A stretch of DNA of 64,000 bases from positions 1 to 64,000 of the IMG/VR virus record IMGVR_UViG_3300042367_000228; one strand, 5' to 3'. The notes beneath the pieces were generated by a model. The model was not told where the DNA came from. It was given only the letters and a program-made list of their open reading frames with translations, and did no database searches. The stretch's first letter is position 1. The number at the start of each line of letters is the position of its first letter. Shown here piece after piece: positions 1,049 to 24,353 of the stretch. Both the position numbers and the translations under genes were made by a program.

Positions 1049-1402
1049 TTAAAAAGCATCAGTAGCTACTGGATCTGTTATTACCGGAGTATTGCCACGC
1101 AACATAATATTACCTTGATGCAAGTCAGTTCTAAATGATGAGTTGTGTTCAGCTACAGCGTCTAGAATAGGAAGCAATTGCGGGTAGTGTTGTTTTAAAA
1201 AATTTTCTGCTTCTTGTTCTCCAGACATTTGATCGCCAATAATCAGCATATACCATTCAGCGCCTTTTGGAAAAGTTTTTCTAATCCAATTTGCACGTTC
1301 ATCGATAAACGGTACTTGATCCGGGTAAGTCGTTTTCAAACGTTTAATTACGTCTGCAACGCTTTCGATTATAATTGTAGTGTAAAGTTCTCTTAGTTTC
1401 AT
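1049..1402 (-). CDS. Hypothetical protein ending in a protein-kinase-like catalytic-loop motif; no N-lobe
   Basis: C-terminal DLHQGNIMLRGNTPVITDP resembles the DLHxGN...D motif of PKL/APH-type kinases; only 117 aa. Confidence 0.5.
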   Translation of the reverse strand: MKLRELYTTIIIESVADVIKRLKTTYPDQVPFIDERANWIRKTFPKGAEWYMLIIGDQMSGEQEAENFLKQHYPQLLPILDAVAEHNSSFRTDLHQGNIMLRGNTPVITDPVATDAF

Positions 1403-3168
1403 TGATTTTCCATTTTAGCTTTATGTGAATCAACTCGTTGTTGAAACTGTTCAGGTGTAATATTCGTACCGTGCGTTTGCAGTCCTTTGTAAACTATATC
1501 AGCTATTGCTGGATCTCTAGCTGCAGCAGTCATTACGGGAACAGTAAGCAGAAGGATTGCTCTTGGCACACTCGTAACGTATGCTTGCATTACCACTGGA
1601 GTTATTTGAGTTGGATCTAGACCATTAATTCCAGTAGATCCTTTTTTGCTAAAGTACTCATTCCATTGTTCAAAGGCGCTCAAATCTTCAGTATTCTCTA
1701 TACCTAACGCTGCAGGGAATTTAGCAGCGTATTGGCTCCATACTTCTGGATTGGTTTTAATAAAAGGTTCAGCGTCAGGCCAACGTTGTTTCATTACCCG
1801 TGCTGCGTATAGTGCTGCTAGTTGTGCTCTATGGGGATGATTAGATTCTAATATGTCTTGTGCTAACGCTGGCCAATCAGTTATGCCAAATCGTCTAGCG
1901 TATTCAATTAGTTCAGATACTTGATCATAATAGCTAGCAAGTAAATCAAGATGTAACCATTCTACTAATTTTTCTTCAGCTTTGGGCCAACGTTTTTTAA
2001 GTACATTAGTAGCGTAGTCAACTAATAGTTCAGGATTGTTGCTTTCTAGCATGCTAGGTTCAGCTTCAGGCCATGGGGTAGTAACATTATCTCTAACATA
2101 AAAATATGAATATCTACTACTTGAGAACGGCATTCTTTTAAGTATCTCAGGTTCAATCTCTGGGCAGCGTTCTTGTACCTGGCCAACATATTCTCTAAAT
2201 GCGTGTTGGTTATTTTCTTTAAGTATTCTAGCTTCAAGTCCTGGCCATCTTTGTAGTCCTATCACATTATTCCAATACCCAAAGCAATCTCCTATGGAAG
2301 CAAAGTTTAAAAGGTATTGTTCTATTTTTTCGTCTCTGCCATTTTTTTCTGTGTAATCAATTACGCGGTCAATGTCGATTGATTTGATCTTTGGTTTGTT
2401 TTCTTGTTTTCTAGTAACTAAGGCAGTATCTATATGTTTGAATGCTTTTTTACTAAAGAATACTGCTTGGCATGGTTCTGCTTCATGTATAACAGCGTGG
2501 AATTCGTCAACTACTAGTTGAATGCCTAGTCCGCGGAATACAGAAGACCAATCGTTAGTTACGCGTGTTGCAGGGTGACTTGTATCGTCTTCGTAATCGT
2601 AGCCGGATCTAGACTCTTTGCGTTTACGTAATTTTTCATAAGCTATACTTCTAGTAACCGTCCATAGTATTGCAGCAGGGCCTTGTGTTGGGATTTCGTT
2701 ATAGTAACCTTGAAATTCTGTAGCTCGGGATTTCTCTCTGCTTATAGCGCCGTCACTAAGATGATATTGTTTTTGCAGTTTAGCTAAGTCTTTTTCTAAG
2801 TCATCTTCAGTATAGTTAGAAGTGTTTGGATTACCAGATATAACTAGTGATCTGCCTGCTCCGGTATATTTAAGTACTTGTATATACGGACGTCCAGCAA
2901 CAAAATCAGGGTATTGAGTGAAATCCTTATATCGATCTACTTCATACATCTGCCAAGTTAATGCTAACGGAAAGGTATAAACACCATTGGGCGTATTAAA
3001 AGCCGACTTTGGGTTTATACCTGCTTTGTTTAAAGTTGTAAATGTTATGTAGATATCCGGGTCATCTTTATAGGGTAATAATTTCTCATATGCAGATACC
3101 TTTGGATTCTGTGCTGGTTTAGTTCTAGCTTCTATAATGTCTAGTTCATATAATTCTCTTAAGAGCAT
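1399..3168 (-). CDS. Hypothetical phage protein, probably head-internal, with RWPxAEP repeats
   Basis: 589-aa ORF; MLLRELYE..IIE-A N-terminus; repeated RWPGLE/PWPEAEP/RWPKAEE/RWPDAEP units; ATAAATA motif upstream (3196-3202). Confidence 0.7.
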   Translation of the reverse strand: MLLRELYELDIIEARTKPAQNPKVSAYEKLLPYKDDPDIYITFTTLNKAGINPKSAFNTPNGVYTFPLALTWQMYEVDRYKDFTQYPDFVAGRPYIQVLKYTGAGRSLVISGNPNTSNYTEDDLEKDLAKLQKQYHLSDGAISREKSRATEFQGYYNEIPTQGPAAILWTVTRSIAYEKLRKRKESRSGYDYEDDTSHPATRVTNDWSSVFRGLGIQLVVDEFHAVIHEAEPCQAVFFSKKAFKHIDTALVTRKQENKPKIKSIDIDRVIDYTEKNGRDEKIEQYLLNFASIGDCFGYWNNVIGLQRWPGLEARILKENNQHAFREYVGQVQERCPEIEPEILKRMPFSSSRYSYFYVRDNVTTPWPEAEPSMLESNNPELLVDYATNVLKKRWPKAEEKLVEWLHLDLLASYYDQVSELIEYARRFGITDWPALAQDILESNHPHRAQLAALYAARVMKQRWPDAEPFIKTNPEVWSQYAAKFPAALGIENTEDLSAFEQWNEYFSKKGSTGINGLDPTQITPVVMQAYVTSVPRAILLLTVPVMTAAARDPAIADIVYKGLQTHGTNITPEQFQQRVDSHKAKMENQ

Positions 3169-12946: not shown

Positions 12947-13402
12947 TTAAAGAGTTGCGTCTTCCATGCCTGCACATCTTAGTCGTATAATATTGCTTAA
13001 TGCATACGATTTCTGATCTAAGGCTTTTGTAATACCCAACCATTGATTTCTCAGTAGTGCAAATTCGTTAATAACAAGTTCATATTCGATTACATCGTCT
13101 TCACCTTCTACATACTTTTCACAATCGCGACTACTTAATGCCCTTGCGTATGTTTCTAAATATTTTCTAAAGTGATAACTCTTTAATCTTTTAAGTTCTA
13201 TATTAAGGAACTCAAGGATAGCTTCGACTTCTTGAAGCTGTCCATATCTATGTTCTACAATGCCTGGCATTGCTGCAGATGCTTTTTCTACATTTCCTAT
13301 TATTTTACACTCTTGTTTGGCACTTGTCAACTCTGTTTGAAAATATACAATGCCGTCAGGTAGTTTTGTAATGTCTTTTACGATTGTAGAATACCAACTC
13401 AT
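12947..13402 (-). CDS. uvsY: Recombination mediator UvsY
   Basis: YLETYARALSSRDCEKYVEGE motif; between uvsX and uvsW. Confidence 0.88.
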   Translation of the reverse strand: MSWYSTIVKDITKLPDGIVYFQTELTSAKQECKIIGNVEKASAAMPGIVEHRYGQLQEVEAILEFLNIELKRLKSYHFRKYLETYARALSSRDCEKYVEGEDDVIEYELVINEFALLRNQWLGITKALDQKSYALSNIIRLRCAGMEDATL

Positions 13403-13638
13403 TAAAACTCCAATTCTGAATAATCGTCATCATCTTCGTCGCTATTATCTTCTAAGTAGTATGTAATAGCTTGATCTAATACAGGATCAATACCAATAGC
13501 ACCTTGAAAGGTACGATCAGTAGCACCAAAGTCTGCTAACAATTCAATAAATCTCTCAGCAGCAATTTCTGCTTGTTTCTTATCAATATAATCTGCAAAC
13601 AACAACCATACATCAGCAATTTGTGTTTCATTCAACAT
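13402..13638 (-). CDS. Small acidic hypothetical protein
   Basis: ATG 13638 (MLNETQ) overlapping the uvsX end; acidic tail. Confidence 0.65.
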   Translation of the reverse strand: MLNETQIADVWLLFADYIDKKQAEIAAERFIELLADFGATDRTFQGAIGIDPVLDQAITYYLEDNSDEDDDDYSELEF

Positions 13639-14716
13639 TATTATCGTCCTCCATGACGTAATCATCTTCAATGATATCTTCAATGTCATCAAATACCACT
13701 GGTACATCAGTAAACTCGTTCATTGCTCTTAACAACGAATCATTAGTATTACTTTCCCATTCCTTACGGTACAATTTAATTTCAGTACCATCAGTTGCCA
13801 CATATTTAAGTCTATTTCCATCTTTTTTCAAGATATTCTTTTTCTCAAATAAATCAACTAAACCACTAAATGGGTTCATACCTGTAGTATATGGAATTTT
13901 AATTTGTAATGACTCAAATGGTTTAGCATAACGTGTTTTCATAATTTTACATGAGGCACGAATACCGTTAACTTCGCTAACTTTATTACCATCTTCGTCT
14001 TCTTTCAATTTAAGTTTTTTCATTGCTACTACAATACTAGATGCATAGATAAAACCTTGACCGCCTGAAATCTTATCGTCTGGATCAAACATATCTTGTG
14101 ATGCATAACTATGGTTAGTACATACTAAACCTACATTGTGACTACCGAACATATTAACACAGTTACGAACGAGTGCTGTAAGTGCTTTAGGTTTACGACC
14201 CATATCACCTTTTAAATCACCTGCTTCGAATTGATTAATATCAGTCGGAGTTAATAACATACCTAATGAATCTACTACAAACAAGACTTTCGGTTTGTCT
14301 TCCATAGCTTTGTATTCTTTCATAAACTCACTTATAGTTTTAGCTACGTCATCAATCATAGCCATGTTAAGTTTAAGAAGTTTTTCTTCACTTGTATCTA
14401 CACCTAGTGCGTGTAGCCAAGCTTCGTCTAGTGCGTTTTCAGAATCAATCAATACTACATAAATTTCTTGTTCTTGAGCGTGTTTAATGATATTACCTGA
14501 GCAGATGTAACTTTTACCTGCACCTGATTCGCCTGCAAACACAGTTACTTTGCCTAATGGAATACCTTTGTTGAAATCTGAACTAATAAGATAGTTCAAT
14601 GCGAAATTGCCAGTACTTACCCAATCTGTAGGATCATTAAAGCCTACACCTAAGCCGTCAATGCTTTTTGTTAGAGTTTTTCGAAATTTTGTTAAATCAA
14701 AGGGACGAGTAGCCAT
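13628..14716 (-). CDS. uvsX: RecA-like recombinase UvsX
   Basis: [10 protein letters not shown] Walker A, IDSENA, VVDSLG, KTRYAKP; own GGAG SD. Confidence 0.95.
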
Positions 14717-15461
14717 TAGTTATCTCCGTGTGTAGTTTTCTATTTTCTTTTTTGTTATGTTTGCCAAACCGATCTTTACGTTCTTCTGCTGTCATTTTAG
14801 ATATTTGTTCTTTCTTTATATTACTCATTTTTTTACATATTTCTGCATTATGAGTATACTCTAATTTTGCTTGAGATTCTCTCATTTTTCGTTTAGTTTC
14901 ATCAGTATGCTTCATACCAATATGTCCATTAGATTTACCTTTTTTTGCTAAAGAAATTGCCAATTTTCTCTCTTCAGACATAGGACCTCTAAGTTTTCCA
15001 CTCAATGATGCTTTTATTTTTTGACGCTGTTCGTTAGTAAATCCTCGGCGTTTAGCAGATGCACTCATTTTCTTAATAGTTTCCACTGAATGACGCTTAT
15101 TGAGCATTCCGGTGATACCTTGTTTAATATTCTCTCTCATTTTTTTTCGAGTTAATGGTCCTGGATTTATTAATCCATCGCCTCCATCTGTTAAATTGTG
15201 TAATATACCGGTACCTATATCTTTTCTACCATAAAAAGATATTAAATCTATTTCTAATGAAATTGCTGCTGACTCAAATAAATTTTCTTTTATGAATTTA
15301 ATTTTTGATTTATCTTTTGGAACGCTGATTCTACCATGCGTCTCAAAAGCTCGATTTTTTTTACCTTTACCGATATAATACGGTGTATTATCAGATTTTC
15401 TTAAATAACTGTAAACATAAAAAATAGGGGTATGATTATTATCAAAGGGTTTTGTTGCCAT
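14697..15461 (-). mobile_element. Free-standing GIY-YIG homing endonuclease with NUMOD3-like repeats
   Basis: FYVYSYLR...PYYIGKG; [10 protein letters not shown]; repeated [19 protein letters not shown]; starts MATKPFD. Confidence 0.9.
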
Positions 15462-15480
15462 GAATATACTCCAAACAATG

Positions 15481-15508
15481 TAACGTAGCAAGACCCCTTG
15501 CTACGTTA
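15481..15508 (-). terminator. 12-bp stem-loop between ssb and the endonuclease
   Basis: TAACGTAGCAAG-ACCC-CTTGCTACGTTA. Confidence 0.6.
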
Positions 15509-15520
15509 ATCTTACACCTA

Positions 15521-16531
15521 TTAACCGCGGTTACGAATTCTTGCTAAAATATCATTAGCACGAGAATCGCTTGATGCCGCAGGCGCTGTGTCAACAGCAG
15601 TTGGTGGAGTATATGCATTAACAGTTTCAGCTGGCTCATCCCAAGGTAATTCTTCTTCGACTTTGTGTACTACAGGAGCTACGGGTGCAACAACTGGTGC
15701 TACTGTAGCAGTATGCGTAGGAGCTGCATTTTCGTCAAACTGTACACCATATGGTCTAAAGTATTTGCCCCAACGTTCGATGTCATATGCTTCACCATTT
15801 ACTGATGCTTCAAACATTTCCATCATAACTTTAAGTTCAACGTCGTTTGGTTTTTTAGGTAAGTAGTCTGATAAGTTTGGTAATCCAAATTTATCAATTG
15901 CTGCATTTTCAGCATCGCTTAATGGACGTGTGTTACGTTTCCAAGTTGATGTTGAATAATCAGCAAAGCCGCCTTTGCTACCGACACGTAATGTAAAGTC
16001 GAAACCATTTACATAGTCTGTAGGTAATTCTGTATATTCTTCGTCAGTTAATGCTGCGTGAATTAATTTGTTAATTTGTGGTCCGATAATAAATCTACGG
16101 ATTGAATTTTCAGGTGGTTCTTTTTCGTCTAAACCGTCTTTAGATACAAAGCCATGATAAATGAAGCTACGTTTTTTCCAGTATTTACGACCCATGTCTT
16201 CTAATGAAGGATCTTTAAACCAGGGACGCACTTCTGAAAGAATCGGACATACTGAACCGTCGTTATACATTTCAACGCATGGTACATTTACTGTTACTGC
16301 TTTATTATCTGTTTGACCTTTAATACCTGCAAAAGGTAATTTGATTACGTTGCGTTCAACCCAGAAAAAAGTGTTATCTGGATTACCGTCTGGTAGGAAT
16401 CTAAAAGTTGCTTCGCCGCCTGATTTAATAGTCCAGAAAGGATAAATTGATTTATCGCCGCCTGTGTTACTATCTGTTGTACGTGTTTCTGCCGCTTTTA
16501 ATTTTGCTCTGATTTCTGCTAGTGTTGCCAT
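15521..16531 (-). CDS. gp32: Single-stranded DNA-binding protein (T4 gp32-like)
   Basis: FRFLPD, PCVEM...CPI, GRKYWKKRS motifs; acidic flexible C-terminal region. Confidence 0.9.
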   Translation of the reverse strand: MATLAEIRAKLKAAETRTTDSNTGGDKSIYPFWTIKSGGEATFRFLPDGNPDNTFFWVERNVIKLPFAGIKGQTDNKAVTVNVPCVEMYNDGSVCPILSEVRPWFKDPSLEDMGRKYWKKRSFIYHGFVSKDGLDEKEPPENSIRRFIIGPQINKLIHAALTDEEYTELPTDYVNGFDFTLRVGSKGGFADYSTSTWKRNTRPLSDAENAAIDKFGLPNLSDYLPKKPNDVELKVMMEMFEASVNGEAYDIERWGKYFRPYGVQFDENAAPTHTATVAPVVAPVAPVVHKVEEELPWDEPAETVNAYTPPTAVDTAPAASSDSRANDILARIRNRG

Positions 16532-16665
16532 TTTATTATCCTATGTGTTTTGAATTTAACACACAGATTTTACTCTGTGTGTTATATAGCCTATGTGTTT
16601 TATTACTAATATTTTTTGTGTTTTATACTTTAATATATAATGCCTTACTGTTAAAGTATGTGCGT

Positions 16666-16694
16666 ATTATATACTCTATTATTTATATGAGCAA
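16666..16694 (-). promoter_or_regulatory. Overlapping sigma70-like and late promoters for ssb
   Basis: TTGCTC-17 nt-TATAAT, with exact TATAAATA (16680-16687) inside the spacer. Confidence 0.7.
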
Positions 16695-16723
16695 GAGAAA
16701 TCTTTCACTTTTTCATATTCTTT

Positions 16724-20973: not shown

Positions 20974-22083
20974 TCACATATTAGAGGAAACAAATATTGG
21001 TAGAGGTGCTTCCCAGTCCTCAATTCTTTCTTCAATTCGCATTCTTTCAAATACCATAGGATCCCATTCTGCTAGTATATCAATCATTCTTACTACTAGT
21101 AATAGTGCTGCTACTAAGTCATCATGTTGCCCCGGTTTACCTTTAAAACTAATACCATGCGCAATAAAAGATTTCAATTCAGTAATTAATGGTTTACTGT
21201 TGATAGTCATTTTATCTTCTTCTACAAAATATTTTAATTTTGAACACGCTGCTATTTTATTATTAAAGGTAGTATTAAATCCTTTGCGGAATTTACGAAC
21301 ATGCCCTTTTCTGCCAGGTTCACTCACAAACAACCCTGGAAATGATTCTTCTCCTAAATTTTCAACTACTACTAACGCGCTTTCGCCTACGGTATTGTTT
21401 TCTATTGACCAATATATAGAATTATATTGATCATATCCTAATTCATCTTGAATGTATAATAGAATTTCTCTAAGTAACTTTACTTGTCCTTGAATAGGTG
21501 TAATGTTATGATGCCATTCTGCTACTTGATTCATCGATGGTAATTCAAAAACTGTTATTGCTGAAAAGTCACCACCAGTTCCTAAACTAGGATCTAATGC
21601 AATCAAGTATAAATTACCAGCTGTTGGAGCCTTATACCAACGTACTTGACCCATTTTCATTATAGGTTCTTTACCGTATAATTCTACTAACTTTAAACTG
21701 CTAATAAGAGTTTCGTCGTATACTAAAAATTCGCAATTTTTGATTAGAACGTTATTTGCATAATACCTGTGATTCTGTTCAACATTAAACAGATCGTATA
21801 CTGGTTCTTCATCTAACAGCCACTTAACAGACACGACATTATCAAGTTTGCCATTAACTAAAATTTTTTGTTTAGGCAATAATAATCTACCTTCTATCGG
21901 TTTAAACCCATTAAGAAAATATTTATGATCAGGAGTGCTTTTAAGTGAATGACGTTGTGTAGTTACATGAAGTATCTTTTTAACACCTTTAACTAAGATT
22001 CCGTCAAACTTGCTCCAGCCGGTGTCAGTTAGCACCGTTAATCCTAACTTATTTTTTATTAATTCTTCCGCGTGTAAATCCAT
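20974..22083 (-). CDS. terL: Terminase large subunit, C-terminal nuclease half, preceded by split-intein C fragment
   Basis: After ...VLIKN comes CEFLVYDETLI; RNase H-like LIALDPSLGTGGDFS and HDDLVAA; start at ATG 22083 or TTG 22086. Confidence 0.9.
   Translation of the reverse strand: MDLHAEELIKNKLGLTVLTDTGWSKFDGILVKGVKKILHVTTQRHSLKSTPDHKYFLNGFKPIEGRLLLPKQKILVNGKLDNVVSVKWLLDEEPVYDLFNVEQNHRYYANNVLIKNCEFLVYDETLISSLKLVELYGKEPIMKMGQVRWYKAPTAGNLYLIALDPSLGTGGDFSAITVFELPSMNQVAEWHHNITPIQGQVKLLREILLYIQDELGYDQYNSIYWSIENNTVGESALVVVENLGEESFPGLFVSEPGRKGHVRKFRKGFNTTFNNKIAACSKLKYFVEEDKMTINSKPLITELKSFIAHGISFKGKPGQHDDLVAALLLVVRMIDILAEWDPMVFERMRIEERIEDWEAPLPIFVSSNM
21736..22083 (-). mobile_element. Split intein, C fragment (~116 aa)
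   Basis: TPDH (block B), PVYDLFNVEQNHRYYANNVLIKN (blocks F/G), +1 Cys. Confidence 0.88.
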
Positions 22084-22828
22084 CAAGTTCTGTTCCTTCT
22101 TTAAATTGTTTGTTAATTACTCCATTATTATACCAACACATGCCTCTCTTTGATATTTGTAATCTAGGAAGTCTTCCCTTAACAAATCCGTCAGGGCATA
22201 TATCTTTATAGGTCTCAATAACTCCATTATTAAACCATTGTTTGTCTTTTGCTGATCCAGGTTTTCCTTTTTTGGAGTCACTTATTTTTTTTGCTCTTAT
22301 AGGACATTTGTTAAACTCATAATAACCTGGTTGGCTTCTAACTAACAGTTGAGTTTCTCTTTCAGATTCAGACCATTTAGTACCTAATGTACGTCCACCA
22401 ATTCCTGGACGAGCGATACCTTTATTATATGGAATAGTTCCTTTTCTCTGAATACTCATTAATTGTTTGGTTTCTTCAGTATGTTTAAATCCAGTACACC
22501 CATCTCCGCCTAGTGTTTTATTTGTTAACGGGCCGGCATGATCAATTAATCGGCCGTACTGGTTAATCAGATCAATTTCAAGAGCCTTTGCTGCAGCATC
22601 TGTTAACTCAGTTTGATACATTTCTATAACCGGAGTTAGATTTTGCGCGACTAATCTAGAAATTACCGCAACTTTTAAATGATTACACGTAGTTTCTGCA
22701 GTTTCTGATAAATGATCTTTATATCGCCTACCGTGGCCCTTCCCAATATAAAACGGTTGATTTGCTAAAATACTCATATAACTTACTGTGATGTTAATTG
22801 GGGTTTTATAAATATATACATAATACAT
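22049..22828 (-). mobile_element. Free-standing GIY-YIG homing endonuclease between the terL halves
   Basis: YYVYIY...PFYIGKG, NKTLGGDG, HTEETKQLMS, two W(F/Y)NNG..GF.(K/R)GR repeats; ATAAATA at 22834-22840. Confidence 0.9.
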
Positions 22829-22854
22829 GCTAGTATTTATCATTTCGTCATATA

Positions 22855-23781
22855 CTATGAACTTAATAATCGCATAATATCGCCCATTGTTAGTTTTTCA
22901 ATTTTTCCAGATGGCCATTTAACAGTTACAACTGAATCATGCACAATACAACCGTATTCACGTCTAAACTTTTCTTCACCTATACGACCGAGCTCTTCTT
23001 GTTTCCATTCTTCATCTCGATCTGGATGATCCCACCAGTCAGACCGGAACCCAGAAAATCCATTAATTCCGATCTTGTTTGGTTTTTCATTCCCAAACTC
23101 ATCAAAAAACTGTTGGCTTTCCTTCCATATAGTAGCAAATTGATCTTCGTCACTGTTTGGTGTAGAAGTAATAATACAACGTCCACCAGTTGCTAGTGTA
23201 GGTGATATAGAAGTCCAAAACTCTTCAGCAATGTTAGGTTGTAGGAAAGCAAACTCATCGCAATATAATAACGAAATACTCATACCCCGTCCTGTTGTGC
23301 CAGTAGTAGTTTGACTTACAATACGTGATCCATTATCAAATTCCATAGACCCTTTATTGTAACTTACTACACCTGCACGTAAGAAGTCTGGACATAGTTC
23401 GTATCCATAACGTATACGTTGCATAATCTCTTGAGCACCTGTGTACTTGTGCGCTGCGATTAAAATAGTTTGATCCGGGTGAAACATTGCATACCATAAT
23501 AAGTATGCAGATGCACATGTTGTTTTACCACTTTGACGCGGTAACATATTAATATTAAAACGATGAGCATGATAACAATTTAATAAGTTAACTTGATAAT
23601 CAAATGGTTGAAATAATAATTTACCTTTTACTGAATGTTGGATATGAAAGAAGTTTCTTGAAAAATGTAAAAATCCGTCAGCCGGATCCGAACACATTAA
23701 TATATCATTAATCTGTTGTTCGTCAAATTTTTCAGTCTTGTGTGCTTTTTTTGTAAGGACACCGTCTAGCGATTTACCCAT
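22855..23781 (-). CDS. terL: Terminase large subunit, N-terminal ATPase half, ending in split-intein N fragment
   Basis: PRQSGKTT Walker A, YCDEFAF Walker B, STPN; ends FRREYG-CIVHDSVVTVK...; ATG 23781 follows GTAAATA (23807-23813). Confidence 0.92.
   Translation of the reverse strand: MGKSLDGVLTKKAHKTEKFDEQQINDILMCSDPADGFLHFSRNFFHIQHSVKGKLLFQPFDYQVNLLNCYHAHRFNINMLPRQSGKTTCASAYLLWYAMFHPDQTILIAAHKYTGAQEIMQRIRYGYELCPDFLRAGVVSYNKGSMEFDNGSRIVSQTTTGTTGRGMSISLLYCDEFAFLQPNIAEEFWTSISPTLATGGRCIITSTPNSDEDQFATIWKESQQFFDEFGNEKPNKIGINGFSGFRSDWWDHPDRDEEWKQEELGRIGEEKFRREYGCIVHDSVVTVKWPSGKIEKLTMGDIMRLLSS
22858..22950 (-). mobile_element. Split intein, N fragment (31 aa)
   Basis: CIVHDSVVTVKWPSGKIEKLTMGDIMRLLSS: block A-like, Cys1 at the conserved EY(E/G)|CEF terminase site. 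Confidence 0.82.
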
Positions 23782-23813
23782 ATATAATCCTTTTTTTTGT
23801 ATTATGTATTTAC

Positions 23814-23841
23814 AAAAAAAAGCGGACATAATGTCCGCTTT
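23814..23841 (-). terminator. Intrinsic terminator
   Basis: AAAGCGGACAT-T-ATGTCCGCTTT followed by a T-tract on the minus strand. Confidence 0.8.
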
Positions 23842-23861
23842 GTGATTAGTATTTGTATGTC

Positions 23862-24353
23862 TTATTTACGAGATTTAACATCTTCATATAACGATGCAAG
23901 ATGATTAACAAGAGACTCGTGGCGAATGTTCCACGGGTTGCCGCCACCTGCTTGTTTAGGAGCTTCTCCGCCTTTACTAAACATATCATTGCCTGTTGGT
24001 GTAACCGCATCGATATCGAATACTTTAGAGCCTTTGTCGCCTTGTTTAGAATTACCAAAGCTATCACCGATAACAATTTCTGCTTCATCATTGCCTAATA
24101 ATTTTTCATCGTCGTGAGGTGAGTGTGTAGGTTCATTGTCTGCATCACCGCCGATGCCTTTTAAAACATCAATTAACTCACGAATACCGTCTGCACCTTT
24201 ACTGTTAATAGTAAGATTCATGTTTAATGATTCATCGTGAGCAGGACCACTTTGTATAACAGCCGCCGGCATATCACCGCCGCATTCTTCAATTGATGTA
24301 TCTACACCTTCATCAATCTGATACATCTTTTGCATTAATTCTTTAAAATCCAT
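23862..24353 (-). CDS. Acidic hypothetical, probable prohead core/internal protein
   Basis: MDFKELM...IDE-G start, acidic composition, head-gene context. Confidence 0.65.
   Translation of the reverse strand: MDFKELMQKMYQIDEGVDTSIEECGGDMPAAVIQSGPAHDESLNMNLTINSKGADGIRELIDVLKGIGGDADNEPTHSPHDDEKLLGNDEAEIVIGDSFGNSKQGDKGSKVFDIDAVTPTGNDMFSKGGEAPKQAGGGNPWNIRHESLVNHLASLYEDVKSRK

What the first reader, a model, noticed from the sequence alone, without database searches (positions are those of the whole stretch)
14697..15461. Homing endonuclease captured the uvsX start and rebuilt a recoded copy
The endonuclease starts ATG GCA ACA AAA CCC TTT GAT (MATKPFD), and uvsX starts ATG GCT ACT CGT CCC TTT GAT (MATRPFD) with its own GGAG SD inside the endonuclease 3' end. 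Inference: the element inserted at about codon 7 of uvsX, took the original start and translation signals, and supplied a sequence-diverged replacement. The host gene stays intact without splicing, and the cut site is probably destroyed.
Basis: partly seen in the sequence, partly recalled or inferred. Interest (0 to 1): 0.6.

Follow-up and report, generated by a model that had tools for sequence, protein, structure and literature searches.

The report
Homing endonuclease inside uvsX start
A selfish nuclease gene in a lake jumbo phage sits inside the first codons of the recombinase gene uvsX, is translated from the start signals that uvsX used to have, and brings a slightly re-coded new start for uvsX, so the host gene stays whole without any splicing.

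Summary
The GIY-YIG/NUMOD3 endonuclease ORF (14697-15461, minus strand) begins MATKPFD. uvsX (13628-14716) begins MATRPFD. Each ATG has a GGAG 7 nt upstream, and the two 21-nt copies lie 745 nt apart.

Eleven viral contigs of sister phages carry ssb, the same hairpin and a GGAG. The endonuclease's exact 21 start bases follow, joined directly to uvsX codon 8. A lake metagenome also holds a contig that skips exactly those 745 nt.

All nine other looked-up members of this endonuclease clade (48-57% identical) also lie between ssb and uvsX. Each has a remnant of the resident uvsX start ending at ...TTT-GAT (or a variant of it) just before the cassette. Behind each cassette is a fresh SD and uvsX start. 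That start carries Arg instead of Lys in 8 of 10 occupied alleles, against 3 of 152 empty ones.

In most members the remnant is a mini-ORF. In this window it is fused in frame, and the endonuclease's own ATG is gone.

The element is under purifying selection. It moved recently between lineages and took a tract of uvsX with it.

The cleavage site and immunity to cutting are untested. I class this as a new variant of a known kind; fungal mitochondrial mobile ORFs do the mirror image at gene 3' ends.

The parts
15521..16531 (-). ssb (gp32-like single-strand DNA-binding protein), the gene upstream of the site
   Evidence: Pfam gp32 E 5.6e-4. tblastn finds it directly upstream of uvsX in relatives.
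15481..15508 (-). Terminator-like hairpin of the resident ssb-uvsX intergenic region
   Evidence: 12-bp stem. The 26-nt core (15482-15507) is identical in the 11 empty alleles. A hairpin occupies the same place in other relatives.
15469..15472 (-). GGAG Shine-Dalgarno sequence that belonged to uvsX and now serves the endonuclease (7-nt spacer)
   Evidence: Sequence. Same position in front of uvsX in the empty alleles.
15441..15461 (-). Captured resident uvsX start (copy A): codons 1-7 of the endonuclease, MATKPFD
   Evidence: 21 of 21 identical to the uvsX start of the empty alleles L177-L187. MATKPFD is the UvsX N-terminus in nine relatives.
15423..15431 (-). Codons 11-13 (ACC CCT ATT), where homologous endonucleases have their own initiator ATG; no start codon here
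   Evidence: Alignment A1. L192 keeps SD and ATG at this position.
14697..15461 (-). Free-standing homing endonuclease ORF (254 aa): GIY-YIG domain at about residues 13-100, NUMOD3 repeats behind it
   Evidence: Pfam NUMOD3. PHROG 314 homing endonuclease. GIY-YIG residues invariant. Profile hit to the solved GIY-YIG protein 9u75, E 5e-5. dN/dS 0.06 against L089.
14724..14727 (-). GGAG Shine-Dalgarno for the present uvsX, embedded in the endonuclease's 3' coding end (7-nt spacer)
   Evidence: Sequence. All ten occupied alleles have an SD-like purine-rich motif (AGGAG, AGGA or GGAA) in the endonuclease's 3' end just before uvsX.
14696..14716 (-). Replacement uvsX start (copy B), MATRPFD; the endonuclease's stop TGA (14697-14699) lies inside it
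   Evidence: Differs from the empties only at nt 6, 9, 10, 11 and 12, followed by 41 identical nt. Arg at this position in 8 of 10 occupied alleles against 3 of 152 empty ones.
13628..14716 (-). uvsX (RecA-like recombinase), intact, 362 aa
   Evidence: Pfam RecA E 2.7e-15. 63-69% identical to jumbo-phage UvsX/RecA-like genes and 75-89% to metagenomic relatives.
12947..13402 (-). uvsY-like recombination mediator (context)
   Evidence: PHROG 231, E 2e-16.

Best explanation
This is a free-standing GIY-YIG/NUMOD3 homing-endonuclease cassette. It belongs to a clade that specialises on the 5' end of uvsX in a group of freshwater Rak2-like jumbo phages.

The cassette sits inside the uvsX coding sequence, immediately after the conserved Phe-Asp codons TTT GAT (codon 7 here). 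To its left remain the resident intergenic hairpin, SD, ATG and first seven uvsX codons. At its right end the cassette carries its own SD, ATG and first few uvsX codons, with Arg (CGT) where the resident gene has Lys (AAA). These join the resident gene by homology within the next few bases, so a full-length uvsX is kept with no intron or intein.

In most members of the clade the leftover start is a short mini-ORF in front of the endonuclease's own SD and ATG. In this window and its relative L089 the leftover has fused in frame and the endonuclease's own SD and ATG have decayed. The enzyme is therefore translated only from the captured uvsX initiation region. uvsX is translated from the SD buried in the endonuclease's 3' end, possibly coupled to it, because the two ORFs overlap by 20 nt.

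Shown:
- the anatomy
- the empty alleles
- the invariant insertion point across ten occupied lineages
- purifying selection on the endonuclease
- recent horizontal movement together with a tract of uvsX

Inferred:
- the enzyme cuts the Lys-type uvsX 5' end of endonuclease-free phages during co-infection
- repair copies the cassette in
- the re-coded codons 2-4 protect the carrier from its own enzyme
For: 1. Empty alleles. Eleven viral contigs carry the exact junction of copy A with uvsX codon 8, behind the same hairpin and a GGAG. A contig in lake run X8 skips exactly 14696-15440 (745 nt, with 9 nt fitting both sides) at depth 142, against depth 23 for the occupied contig.

2. Synteny. ssb and uvsX are adjacent (gap of 100 nt or less) in 74 of 127 relatives and in three isolated jumbo phages.

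3. N-termini. MATKPFD is a native UvsX N-terminus. Homologous endonucleases start M-x-x-YYVY, so the window protein has an N-terminal extension of about 10 residues.

4. Family-wide architecture. The nine other looked-up clade members, like the window and L089, lie between ssb and uvsX. Each has a remnant uvsX start ending ...TTT GAT (or a variant) before the cassette and an SD plus a new uvsX start after it. The remnant is a mini-ORF in L198, L200, L202, L286, L287 and L289. It is in frame, with the endonuclease's own ATG kept, in L192. In L288 the endonuclease starts at a TTG inside the remnant. In L285 the remnant's ATG is lost.

5. Arg for Lys. 8 of 10 occupied alleles against 3 of 152 empty ones (Fisher 7e-10). 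The occupied alleles are scattered over the uvsX tree, needing 8 changes of state.

6. Window against the empties. Five of nine bases differ in codons 2-4 (p 0.002), then none in the next 41 (p 0.005).

7. Activity and mobility. GIY-YIG residues are invariant and dN/dS is 0.06. dS is 0.13 for the endonuclease against 0.42-0.74 for the flanking genes. L089 has an empties-like backbone (ssb 91%, uvsY 93-94%) but a window-like tract from the intergenic region through about 800 nt of uvsX.
Against: - No cleavage data exist, so the target site and the protective role of the Arg codon are inferred.
- Two occupied alleles keep Lys (L285 MANKVFD, L286 MKPFD), so Arg is not obligatory.
- Three empty alleles have Arg.
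- The phylogenetically controlled test of the Arg link is underpowered: only 3 independent pairs lie on supported branches.
- Both window copies share the rare CCC Pro codon, which would also fit an in-situ duplication.
- No donor arrangement with a native endonuclease start and this exact replacement start was found in IMG/VR.
- The X8 joint rests on one short contig with only 21 nt on one side.
- Use of ATG 15461 as the start is deduced from the sequence, not measured.
Confidence: 0.8

Rival explanations
1. In-situ duplication. An endonuclease gene landed by two staggered illegitimate joints that duplicated about 20-45 nt of the uvsX start in this lineage. The two copies then diverged by point mutation, and nothing resembling a replacement start travels with the element.
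For: Both copies share CCC TTT GAT, and CCC is a rare Pro codon among relatives. The 41 nt after codon 4 are identical to the empties. No donor with the B-type start and a native endonuclease start was found.
Against: The Arg-type start, preceded by an SD-like purine-rich motif (AGGAG, AGGA or GGAA) in an A-rich leader, recurs behind endonucleases only 48-57% identical to the window's, in uvsX backbones scattered over the tree. AAA to CGT needs three substitutions in one codon, while the neighbouring 41 nt have none. A crossover between nt 12 and 13 explains the shared CCC equally well.
Confidence: 0.1
2. The Arg re-coding is neutral hitch-hiking. The replacement start simply descends from the first donor and gives no protection. 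Immunity comes from elsewhere (the changed upstream sequence, DNA modification, or a cut site further inside uvsX or ssb).
For: Two occupied alleles keep Lys and three empties have Arg. T4 Seg enzymes are reported to cut in a neighbouring gene rather than at their own insertion point (PMC2988022). I could not take the distances from the text, so that part rests on my own knowledge. The independent-pairs test is not significant.
Against: The differences from the empties cluster exactly in codons 2-4. The co-converted tract in L089 is centred on the uvsX start. The insertion point is invariant at a conserved coding motif.
Confidence: 0.25
3. Fossil. The endonuclease is no longer active or mobile, and the arrangement is a frozen accident kept only because uvsX now depends on the SD inside it.
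For: Embedded host signals are known to favour retention of seg and mob genes in T4 (PMC2988022). The C-terminal tail is variable: a 1-nt indel changes the stop between the window and L089.
Against: dN/dS is 0.06 with all GIY-YIG residues kept. dS is 4-6 times lower than in the flanks, and L089 shows a mosaic co-conversion pattern. Empty and occupied alleles co-occur in one lake sample.
Confidence: 0.1
4. Chance or convergent resemblance of two unrelated N-termini.
For: This genome has several recurrent N-terminal motifs shared by otherwise dissimilar ORFs.
Against: Exact empty junctions, a 745-nt joint in reads, and remnants in every clade member.
Confidence: 0.01

Closest known systems
T4 SegA (free-standing GIY-YIG endonuclease next to uvsX)
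   Same: A GIY-YIG enzyme encoded immediately upstream of uvsX in the same orientation. It is reported to make a double-strand break in uvsX (PMC2988022). Signals for the downstream host gene are embedded in the endonuclease gene.
   Different: There is no detectable orthology (BLASTP E 0.11). T4 segA lies between genes. I saw no remnant of the uvsX start upstream of it, and it has its own start.
Fungal mitochondrial mobile ORF elements (Allomyces atp6; Glomus atp6, atp9, cox2, nad3)
   Same: An endonuclease ORF is inserted inside a protein-coding gene without an intron. The element brings a diverged copy of the displaced gene end. The native end stays beside it and matches endonuclease-free relatives. 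The ORF can be in phase with host gene sequence (in Glomus atp6 and nad3) (PMC3630166).
   Different: Those elements replace the 3' (C-terminal) end and leave the native end as a downstream pseudo-copy. Here the 5' end with its translation-initiation region is duplicated, the native copy is re-used as the endonuclease's start, and the host is a phage.
Intronless homing of T4 SegF, SegG and MobE
   Same: A free-standing endonuclease, presence/absence polymorphism between related phages, co-conversion of flanking markers, and immunity by sequence polymorphism of the target (PMC2988022; details beyond the review are from my own knowledge).
   Different: These elements sit in intergenic regions and do not duplicate or capture a host gene start.
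Gene fragments in HEG islands of ICP1-like vibriophages
   Same: Small ORFs next to phage endonuclease genes that are fragments of the neighbouring essential genes; nuclease genes lie at boundaries of genetic exchange (PMC10055350).
   Different: Those fragments are not described there as being fused to, or used as the start of, the endonuclease. A fixed intragenic insertion point with a re-coded replacement start is also not described there.
Engineered 'home-and-rescue' gene drives (my own knowledge, not checked in the library)
   Same: A nuclease cassette sits inside an essential gene and carries a re-coded, cleavage-resistant copy of the displaced part.
   Different: Those are man-made and RNA-guided. 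Here the arrangement is natural and recognition is by protein.

Membership tests
GIY-YIG homing endonucleases | GIY-YIG catalytic core (Y..Y, YIG, Arg, Glu, Asn) | tested here: met
   Y15, Y17, Y29-G31, R37, E70 and N89 are invariant in alignment A1. The profile hits the solved GIY-YIG protein 9u75 at E 5e-5 and UvrC weakly. PHROG 314 'homing endonuclease' E 3e-16. Pfam's GIY-YIG model itself did not score below 0.01.
GIY-YIG homing endonucleases | C-terminal DNA-binding module of the NUMOD type | tested here: met
   Pfam NUMOD3 E 1.5e-7, residues 160-194.
GIY-YIG homing endonucleases | Presence/absence at one fixed site in otherwise homologous genomes | tested here: met
   11 empty contigs with the exact junction. 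10 occupied lineages with the same insertion point. A 745-nt joint in run X8.
GIY-YIG homing endonucleases | Horizontal spread with co-conversion of flanks | tested here: met
   dS 0.13 against 0.42-0.74 in the flanks. L089 is a mosaic with a window-like tract from the intergenic region to about 800 nt into uvsX. Occupied alleles are polyphyletic on the uvsX tree.
GIY-YIG homing endonucleases | Site-specific cleavage of the empty allele and resistance of the occupied allele | not testable with these tools
   Needs an enzyme assay. The only indirect hints are Arg for Lys in 8 of 10 against 3 of 152 and clustered substitutions.
T4 Seg family, SegA orthologue | Sequence orthology to T4 SegA | tested here: not met
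   BLASTP E 0.11, with only repeat-like similarity. No Escherichia phage appeared among the 56 tblastn hits.
T4 Seg family, SegA orthologue | Position directly upstream of uvsX, same strand | tested here: met
   T4 segA 23570-24235 and uvsX 22386-23561. Window 14697-15461 and 13628-14716.
Mobile ORF elements that carry a host-gene end (fungal mitochondrial type) | Endonuclease ORF inside a coding gene, with a duplicated and diverged gene end; the native copy matches endonuclease-free relatives | tested here: met
   Copy A matches the empties at 21 of 21. Copy B differs at 5 of 21. The duplicated end is the 5' end here, not the 3' end as in PMC3630166.
Group I intron or intein insertion | Ribozyme or protein-splicing element that restores the host gene product | tested here: not met
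   No Rfam hit at E up to 1 in 13500-16700. uvsX has its own SD and ATG and a complete N-terminus.

The most novel reading that the evidence does not exclude
A natural 'home-and-rescue' drive in phages. A clade of GIY-YIG endonucleases homes into the coding start of uvsX, the recombinase that homing itself needs. It carries a re-coded (Lys to Arg), cleavage-immune replacement start. The stranded host initiation region is then recruited step by step: first as an upstream mini-ORF, then by stop/start overlap, then by in-frame fusion with loss of the endonuclease's own start. The selfish gene thereby ends up under the host gene's translational control. A possible second target (a tail-fibre-like gene in L216) hints that this is a general route by which free-standing endonucleases invade coding sequence without introns.
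Probability: 0.45. Interest if true: 0.8.

Novelty: new variant of a known kind. Interest (0 to 1): 0.65.

Why it matters
Free-standing phage homing endonucleases are usually described as living between genes. Invasion of coding sequence is thought to need an intron, an intein or a tolerated gene split. Here a whole clade lives inside the first codons of a conserved recombination gene and keeps the gene whole by bringing its own copy of the gene's start.

Natural empty, occupied and intermediate alleles are all available. Together they show how a selfish gene can take over a host gene's ribosome-binding site and start codon.

The finding gives a testable target (about 30 bp of a conserved uvsX 5' end) and a testable immunity change (AAA to CGT). 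It extends the fungal mitochondrial 'mobile ORF with gene end' idea to phages and to 5' ends. It is also a practical warning for annotation: short ORFs or odd N-terminal extensions in front of endonuclease genes may be stranded host gene starts.

Tried and rejected
- Near-identity DNA search in isolated phages found only a 38-nt ssb match to 121Q-like phages, so no close cultured relative exists.
- The first protein-guided locus searches returned relatives of 74-89% UvsX identity, but none of the closest empties. These appeared only when I searched for the predicted junction itself (against 41).
- Searches for a donor arrangement, using the replacement start with its SD and the endonuclease's 5' body, returned only the window's own lineage and L089.
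- More distant endonucleases (35-48% identical; 80 viral loci) are not next to uvsX. A crude scan for duplicated downstream-gene starts among them was at background, apart from L216.
- The leader motif (G/T)ATAAATA resembles the T4 late promoter, but TATAAATA is not enriched in the window (6 found, 14.7 expected). I do not call it a promoter.
- Sigma-70-type promoter matches in the region are at the shuffle level.
- The similarity of the 25 nt upstream of copy B to native ssb-uvsX spacers of relatives is suggestive. I could not separate it from the shared SD, so I left it out of the argument.
- Sharma & Hinton 1994, on the SegA cut site, is not held in the library. The distance of SegA's cut from the uvsX start could therefore not be compared.
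There is therefore no expression evidence.
- No structure or complex prediction was run, because the question did not depend on one.
Full report
**What is in the window**

All genes in the region are on the minus strand. The order is:
- a gp32-like ssb (15521-16531)
- a 12-bp terminator-like hairpin (15508-15481)
- GGAG (15472-15469) and a 7-nt spacer
- a 254-aa ORF from ATG 15461 to TGA 14697-14699
- uvsX, overlapping that ORF's last 20 nt, from ATG 14716 to 13628
- a small ORF and a UvsY-like gene

The 254-aa ORF carries a NUMOD3 motif (Pfam E 1.5e-7) and matches PHROG 314 'homing endonuclease'. It keeps every GIY-YIG core residue that is invariant in its clade. A profile of the clade hits a solved GIY-YIG protein (9u75, E 5e-5).

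uvsX is RecA-like and 63-69% identical to the UvsX/RecA-like genes of Rak2-like jumbo phages such as Phosso, Atu_ph07, vibriophage 2.275.O, CBB, GAP32 and 121Q. The window is the first 64 kb of a 372-kb viral record with terminal repeats. The sequencing runs that hold it are lake-water metagenomes.

The endonuclease starts ATG GCA ACA AAA CCC TTT GAT (MATKPFD). uvsX starts ATG GCT ACT CGT CCC TTT GAT (MATRPFD). The copies agree at 16 of 21 nt, and the last nine are identical. Each has GGAG exactly 7 nt upstream, and they lie 745 nt apart. The endonuclease's stop codon lies inside the second copy, so the ORF is framed by the repeat.

In this genome, the other non-paralogous ORF pairs that share 5 of 6 N-terminal residues all belong to recurrent N-terminal motif families. 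This is the only pair I could assign to clearly different folds.

**Which protein owns the N-terminus**

In 160 related uvsX loci from viral and metagenome contigs, and in three isolated phages, UvsX always begins M-x(0-3)-[KR]-[APST]-F-D followed by x-S-K-F-R-K (Phosso has M in place of F). Nine relatives begin exactly MATKPFD.

Endonuclease homologues align with the window protein only from residue 12-14 on (tblastn; PHROG profiles). The closest homologues (48-57% identical) begin M-x-x-(Y/F)YVY. The first seven residues of the endonuclease are therefore UvsX's. The window protein has an N-terminal extension of about ten residues. At the place of the family's own initiator it reads ACC CCT ATT. 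No other ATG, GTG or TTG precedes the first beta-strand, so ATG 15461 is the only usable start (sequence).

**Empty alleles**

In 74 of 127 relatives with ssb in reach, ssb and uvsX are 100 nt or less apart, arranged as ssb stop, hairpin, SD, ATG. The window's 59-nt ssb-endonuclease spacer has the same layout.

Eleven contigs hold it exactly (L177-L187). They are sister phages (ssb about 82% nt identical, uvsX 86-89%). Each reads ssb stop, the identical 26-nt hairpin, GGAG, the 21 bases of copy A, and then TTA ACA AAA TTT CGA..., as in the window's uvsX.

Independently, lake run X8 has a contig that joins 14695 to 15441. It skips exactly 745 nt, with 9 nt fitting both sides, at depth 142 against 23 for the occupied contig of the same run. 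That contig has only 21 nt on its shorter side, so it is supporting evidence rather than proof on its own.

Copy A is thus the resident uvsX start, and the insertion lies right after codon 7.

**The replacement start**

Against the empties, the window's functional uvsX differs at nt 6, 9, 10, 11 and 12 (GCA ACA AAA to GCT ACT CGT) and then at none of the next 41 nt. The gene as a whole differs at 12% of sites. The chance of five or more of nine differences in codons 2-4 is 0.002, and of none in the next 41 nt is 0.005. Codon 4 is one of only three codons in 330 with all three positions changed.

**The same architecture throughout the clade**

I looked up nine further clade members (P0002, P0003, P0005, P0006, P0013, P0014, P0017, P0019 and P0020). 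Every one lies between ssb and uvsX; in L192 the small 76-aa ORF also lies between ssb and the endonuclease. Upstream of each endonuclease is a remnant of a uvsX start that ends at TTT GAT, or a slight variant such as TTT AAT or TTT G. Downstream of each is an SD-like purine-rich motif (AGGAG, AGGA or GGAA) in an A-rich leader and a complete uvsX start abutting or overlapping the endonuclease's stop.

The remnants form a series:

| State of the remnant | Loci |
|---|---|
| Short mini-ORF that ends before the endonuclease's own SD and ATG (MATRPFDMDK, MTQPFNMYK, MAKSFDI) | L198, L200, L286 |
| 17-codon mini-ORF whose stop overlaps the endonuclease's ATG | L202, L287 |
| Longer out-of-frame ORF running on past the endonuclease's own ATG | L289 |
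| Remnant's ATG deleted | L285 |
| Endonuclease starts at a TTG inside the remnant, using the resident SD | L288 |
| In-frame fusion, with the endonuclease's own SD and ATG still present | L192 (MVKPF...) |
| In-frame fusion, with the endonuclease's own start lost | window, L089 |

Only the window lineage and L192 have an ORF other than uvsX that starts like UvsX. Among the 160-odd relatives scanned, L089 was the only real hit.

**Arg for Lys**

The functional uvsX start of occupied alleles has Arg (CGT five times, CGC once, AGA twice) in 8 of 10 cases. Among 152 distinct empty alleles, 3 have Arg (Fisher 7e-10).

On a tree of UvsX residues 25-300 the ten occupied alleles are scattered, needing 8 changes of state. 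Several sit next to Lys-type empties. The conservative independent-pairs test has only three usable pairs and is not significant.

The link may reflect descent of the replacement start with the cassette, or repeated selection. Either way the Arg-type start goes with the endonuclease. Two occupied alleles keep Lys with other changes (MANKVFD, MKPFD).

**Activity and mobility**

Three contigs are identical to the window. L089 is a second occupied phage, 88% identical overall. Between the window and L089:

| Gene | dS | dN/dS |
|---|---|---|
| Endonuclease | 0.13 | 0.06 |
| ssb | 0.74 | |
| uvsX | 0.48 | |
| Small ORF | 0.61 | |
| uvsY | 0.42 | |

From 14890 to 14657 the only difference is a 1-nt indel, which moves the endonuclease's stop onto the uvsX ATG in L089.

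L089's backbone is of the empties' type: ssb is 91% and uvsY 93-94% identical to the empties, against 81% and 89% to the window. Its endonuclease (97%) and the first roughly 800 nt of uvsX are window-like. Informative sites switch at the intergenic spacer and switch back around 13900-13850. This is the pattern expected from homing with co-conversion. The tract is centred on the uvsX start.

**Mechanism**

Shown:
- a cassette inside the uvsX 5' coding end at a fixed point
- the resident initiation region stranded and, in this window, used as the endonuclease's only start
- a cassette-borne SD and start that keep uvsX whole
- no intron (no Rfam hit)
- purifying selection and recent lateral movement

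Inferred:
- the enzyme recognises the conserved Lys-Pro/Ala-Phe-Asp...Ser-Lys-Phe-Arg-Lys coding stretch of empty alleles
- it cuts nearby
- the phage's own recombination machinery copies the cassette from a co-infecting carrier
- codons 2-4 of the replacement start, together with the different upstream sequence, protect the carrier

Because copy B plus downstream sequence is a contiguous uvsX 5' end, the site is altered rather than physically split. The five mismatches between the two 21-nt repeats should also lower the chance of precise deletion; this too is inference.

**Comparison with what is known**

- T4 SegA is a GIY-YIG enzyme encoded directly upstream of uvsX and reported to cut uvsX (PMC2988022). 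It is not an orthologue, and T4 shows no stranded uvsX start.
- The T4 review notes that promoters of downstream genes embedded in seg and mob genes favour their retention (PMC2988022). Here the embedded signal is the SD and start codon.
- The closest conceptual precedent is the fungal mitochondrial mobile ORF. It inserts in atp6, atp9, cox2 or nad3 and carries a foreign C-terminal gene end, while the native end stays downstream (PMC3630166). The phage case is the mirror image at the 5' end, with the added twist of start capture.
- Fragments of essential genes beside endonuclease genes have been noted in ICP1-like phages (PMC10055350).
- My library searches found no description of a phage endonuclease clade with a fixed intragenic insertion point, a re-coded replacement start and capture of the host start. 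The library is incomplete, so this is not proof of novelty.

**Verdict**

This is a new variant of a known kind, with good natural material for experiments.

Noticed in passing
window 20974-23829 (minus strand): The large terminase gene is 'fractured'. An N-terminal half (22855-23829, Terminase_6N) ends in an intein-N-like stretch. A GIY-YIG/NUMOD3 endonuclease ORF (22049-22843) follows. A C-terminal half (20974-22086, Terminase_6C) begins with an intein-C-like stretch ending ...HN|C-like. This looks like the split-intein plus free-standing endonuclease arrangement of Dassa et al. 2009 (PMC2677866). The intein ends were read by eye only.
   Followed up: partly
L216:1494-1601 and L216:2335-2349: A 42%-identical endonuclease in another viral contig sits upstream of a tail-fibre-like gene that starts MAAENFVV. 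In front of the endonuclease is an SD and an ORF that starts MAAENQKN. The first five codons match at 14 of 15 nt. This is possibly the same 'stranded host start' architecture at a different target gene.
   Followed up: partly
L006-L176, between ssb and uvsX: The ssb-uvsX junction is a hot spot for accessory DNA in relatives. 31 of 127 carry a conserved ORF of about 76 aa (MTLPDERYRALKQGKK...; no Pfam hit). 22 have 0.4-2.3 kb of other genes, with N-termini that look like radical-SAM or short-chain dehydrogenase proteins (by eye; none was scanned against Pfam). None of these is related to the endonuclease.
   Followed up: partly
leaders of L192, L198, L200, L202, L289 (just after the TTT GAT junction): The cassette leaders share a (G/T)ATAAATA-like motif resembling the T4 late promoter TATAAATA. 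The window's own leader lacks it, and TATAAATA is not enriched in the window (6 found against 14.7 expected). Its meaning is unknown.
   Followed up: partly
whole genome G000, e.g. 1049-3168, 95890-96738, 220381-221049, 355158-360570: Many otherwise dissimilar ORFs share N-terminal motifs (M-K/R/L-I/L-x-E-L/I-L/I, and MIELAP...). This suggests large families of distant paralogues or a shared N-terminal signal.
   Followed up: no
window 13628-13707: The 101-aa ORF downstream of uvsX (13402-13707), as listed, overlaps the uvsX 3' end by 80 nt. Its real start is probably an internal ATG.
   Followed up: no
L037:1017-1559: A related endonuclease (51% identical over the catalytic domain) lies upstream of ssb rather than between ssb and uvsX in one relative. 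The neighbourhood therefore hosts more than one endonuclease insertion site.
   Followed up: no
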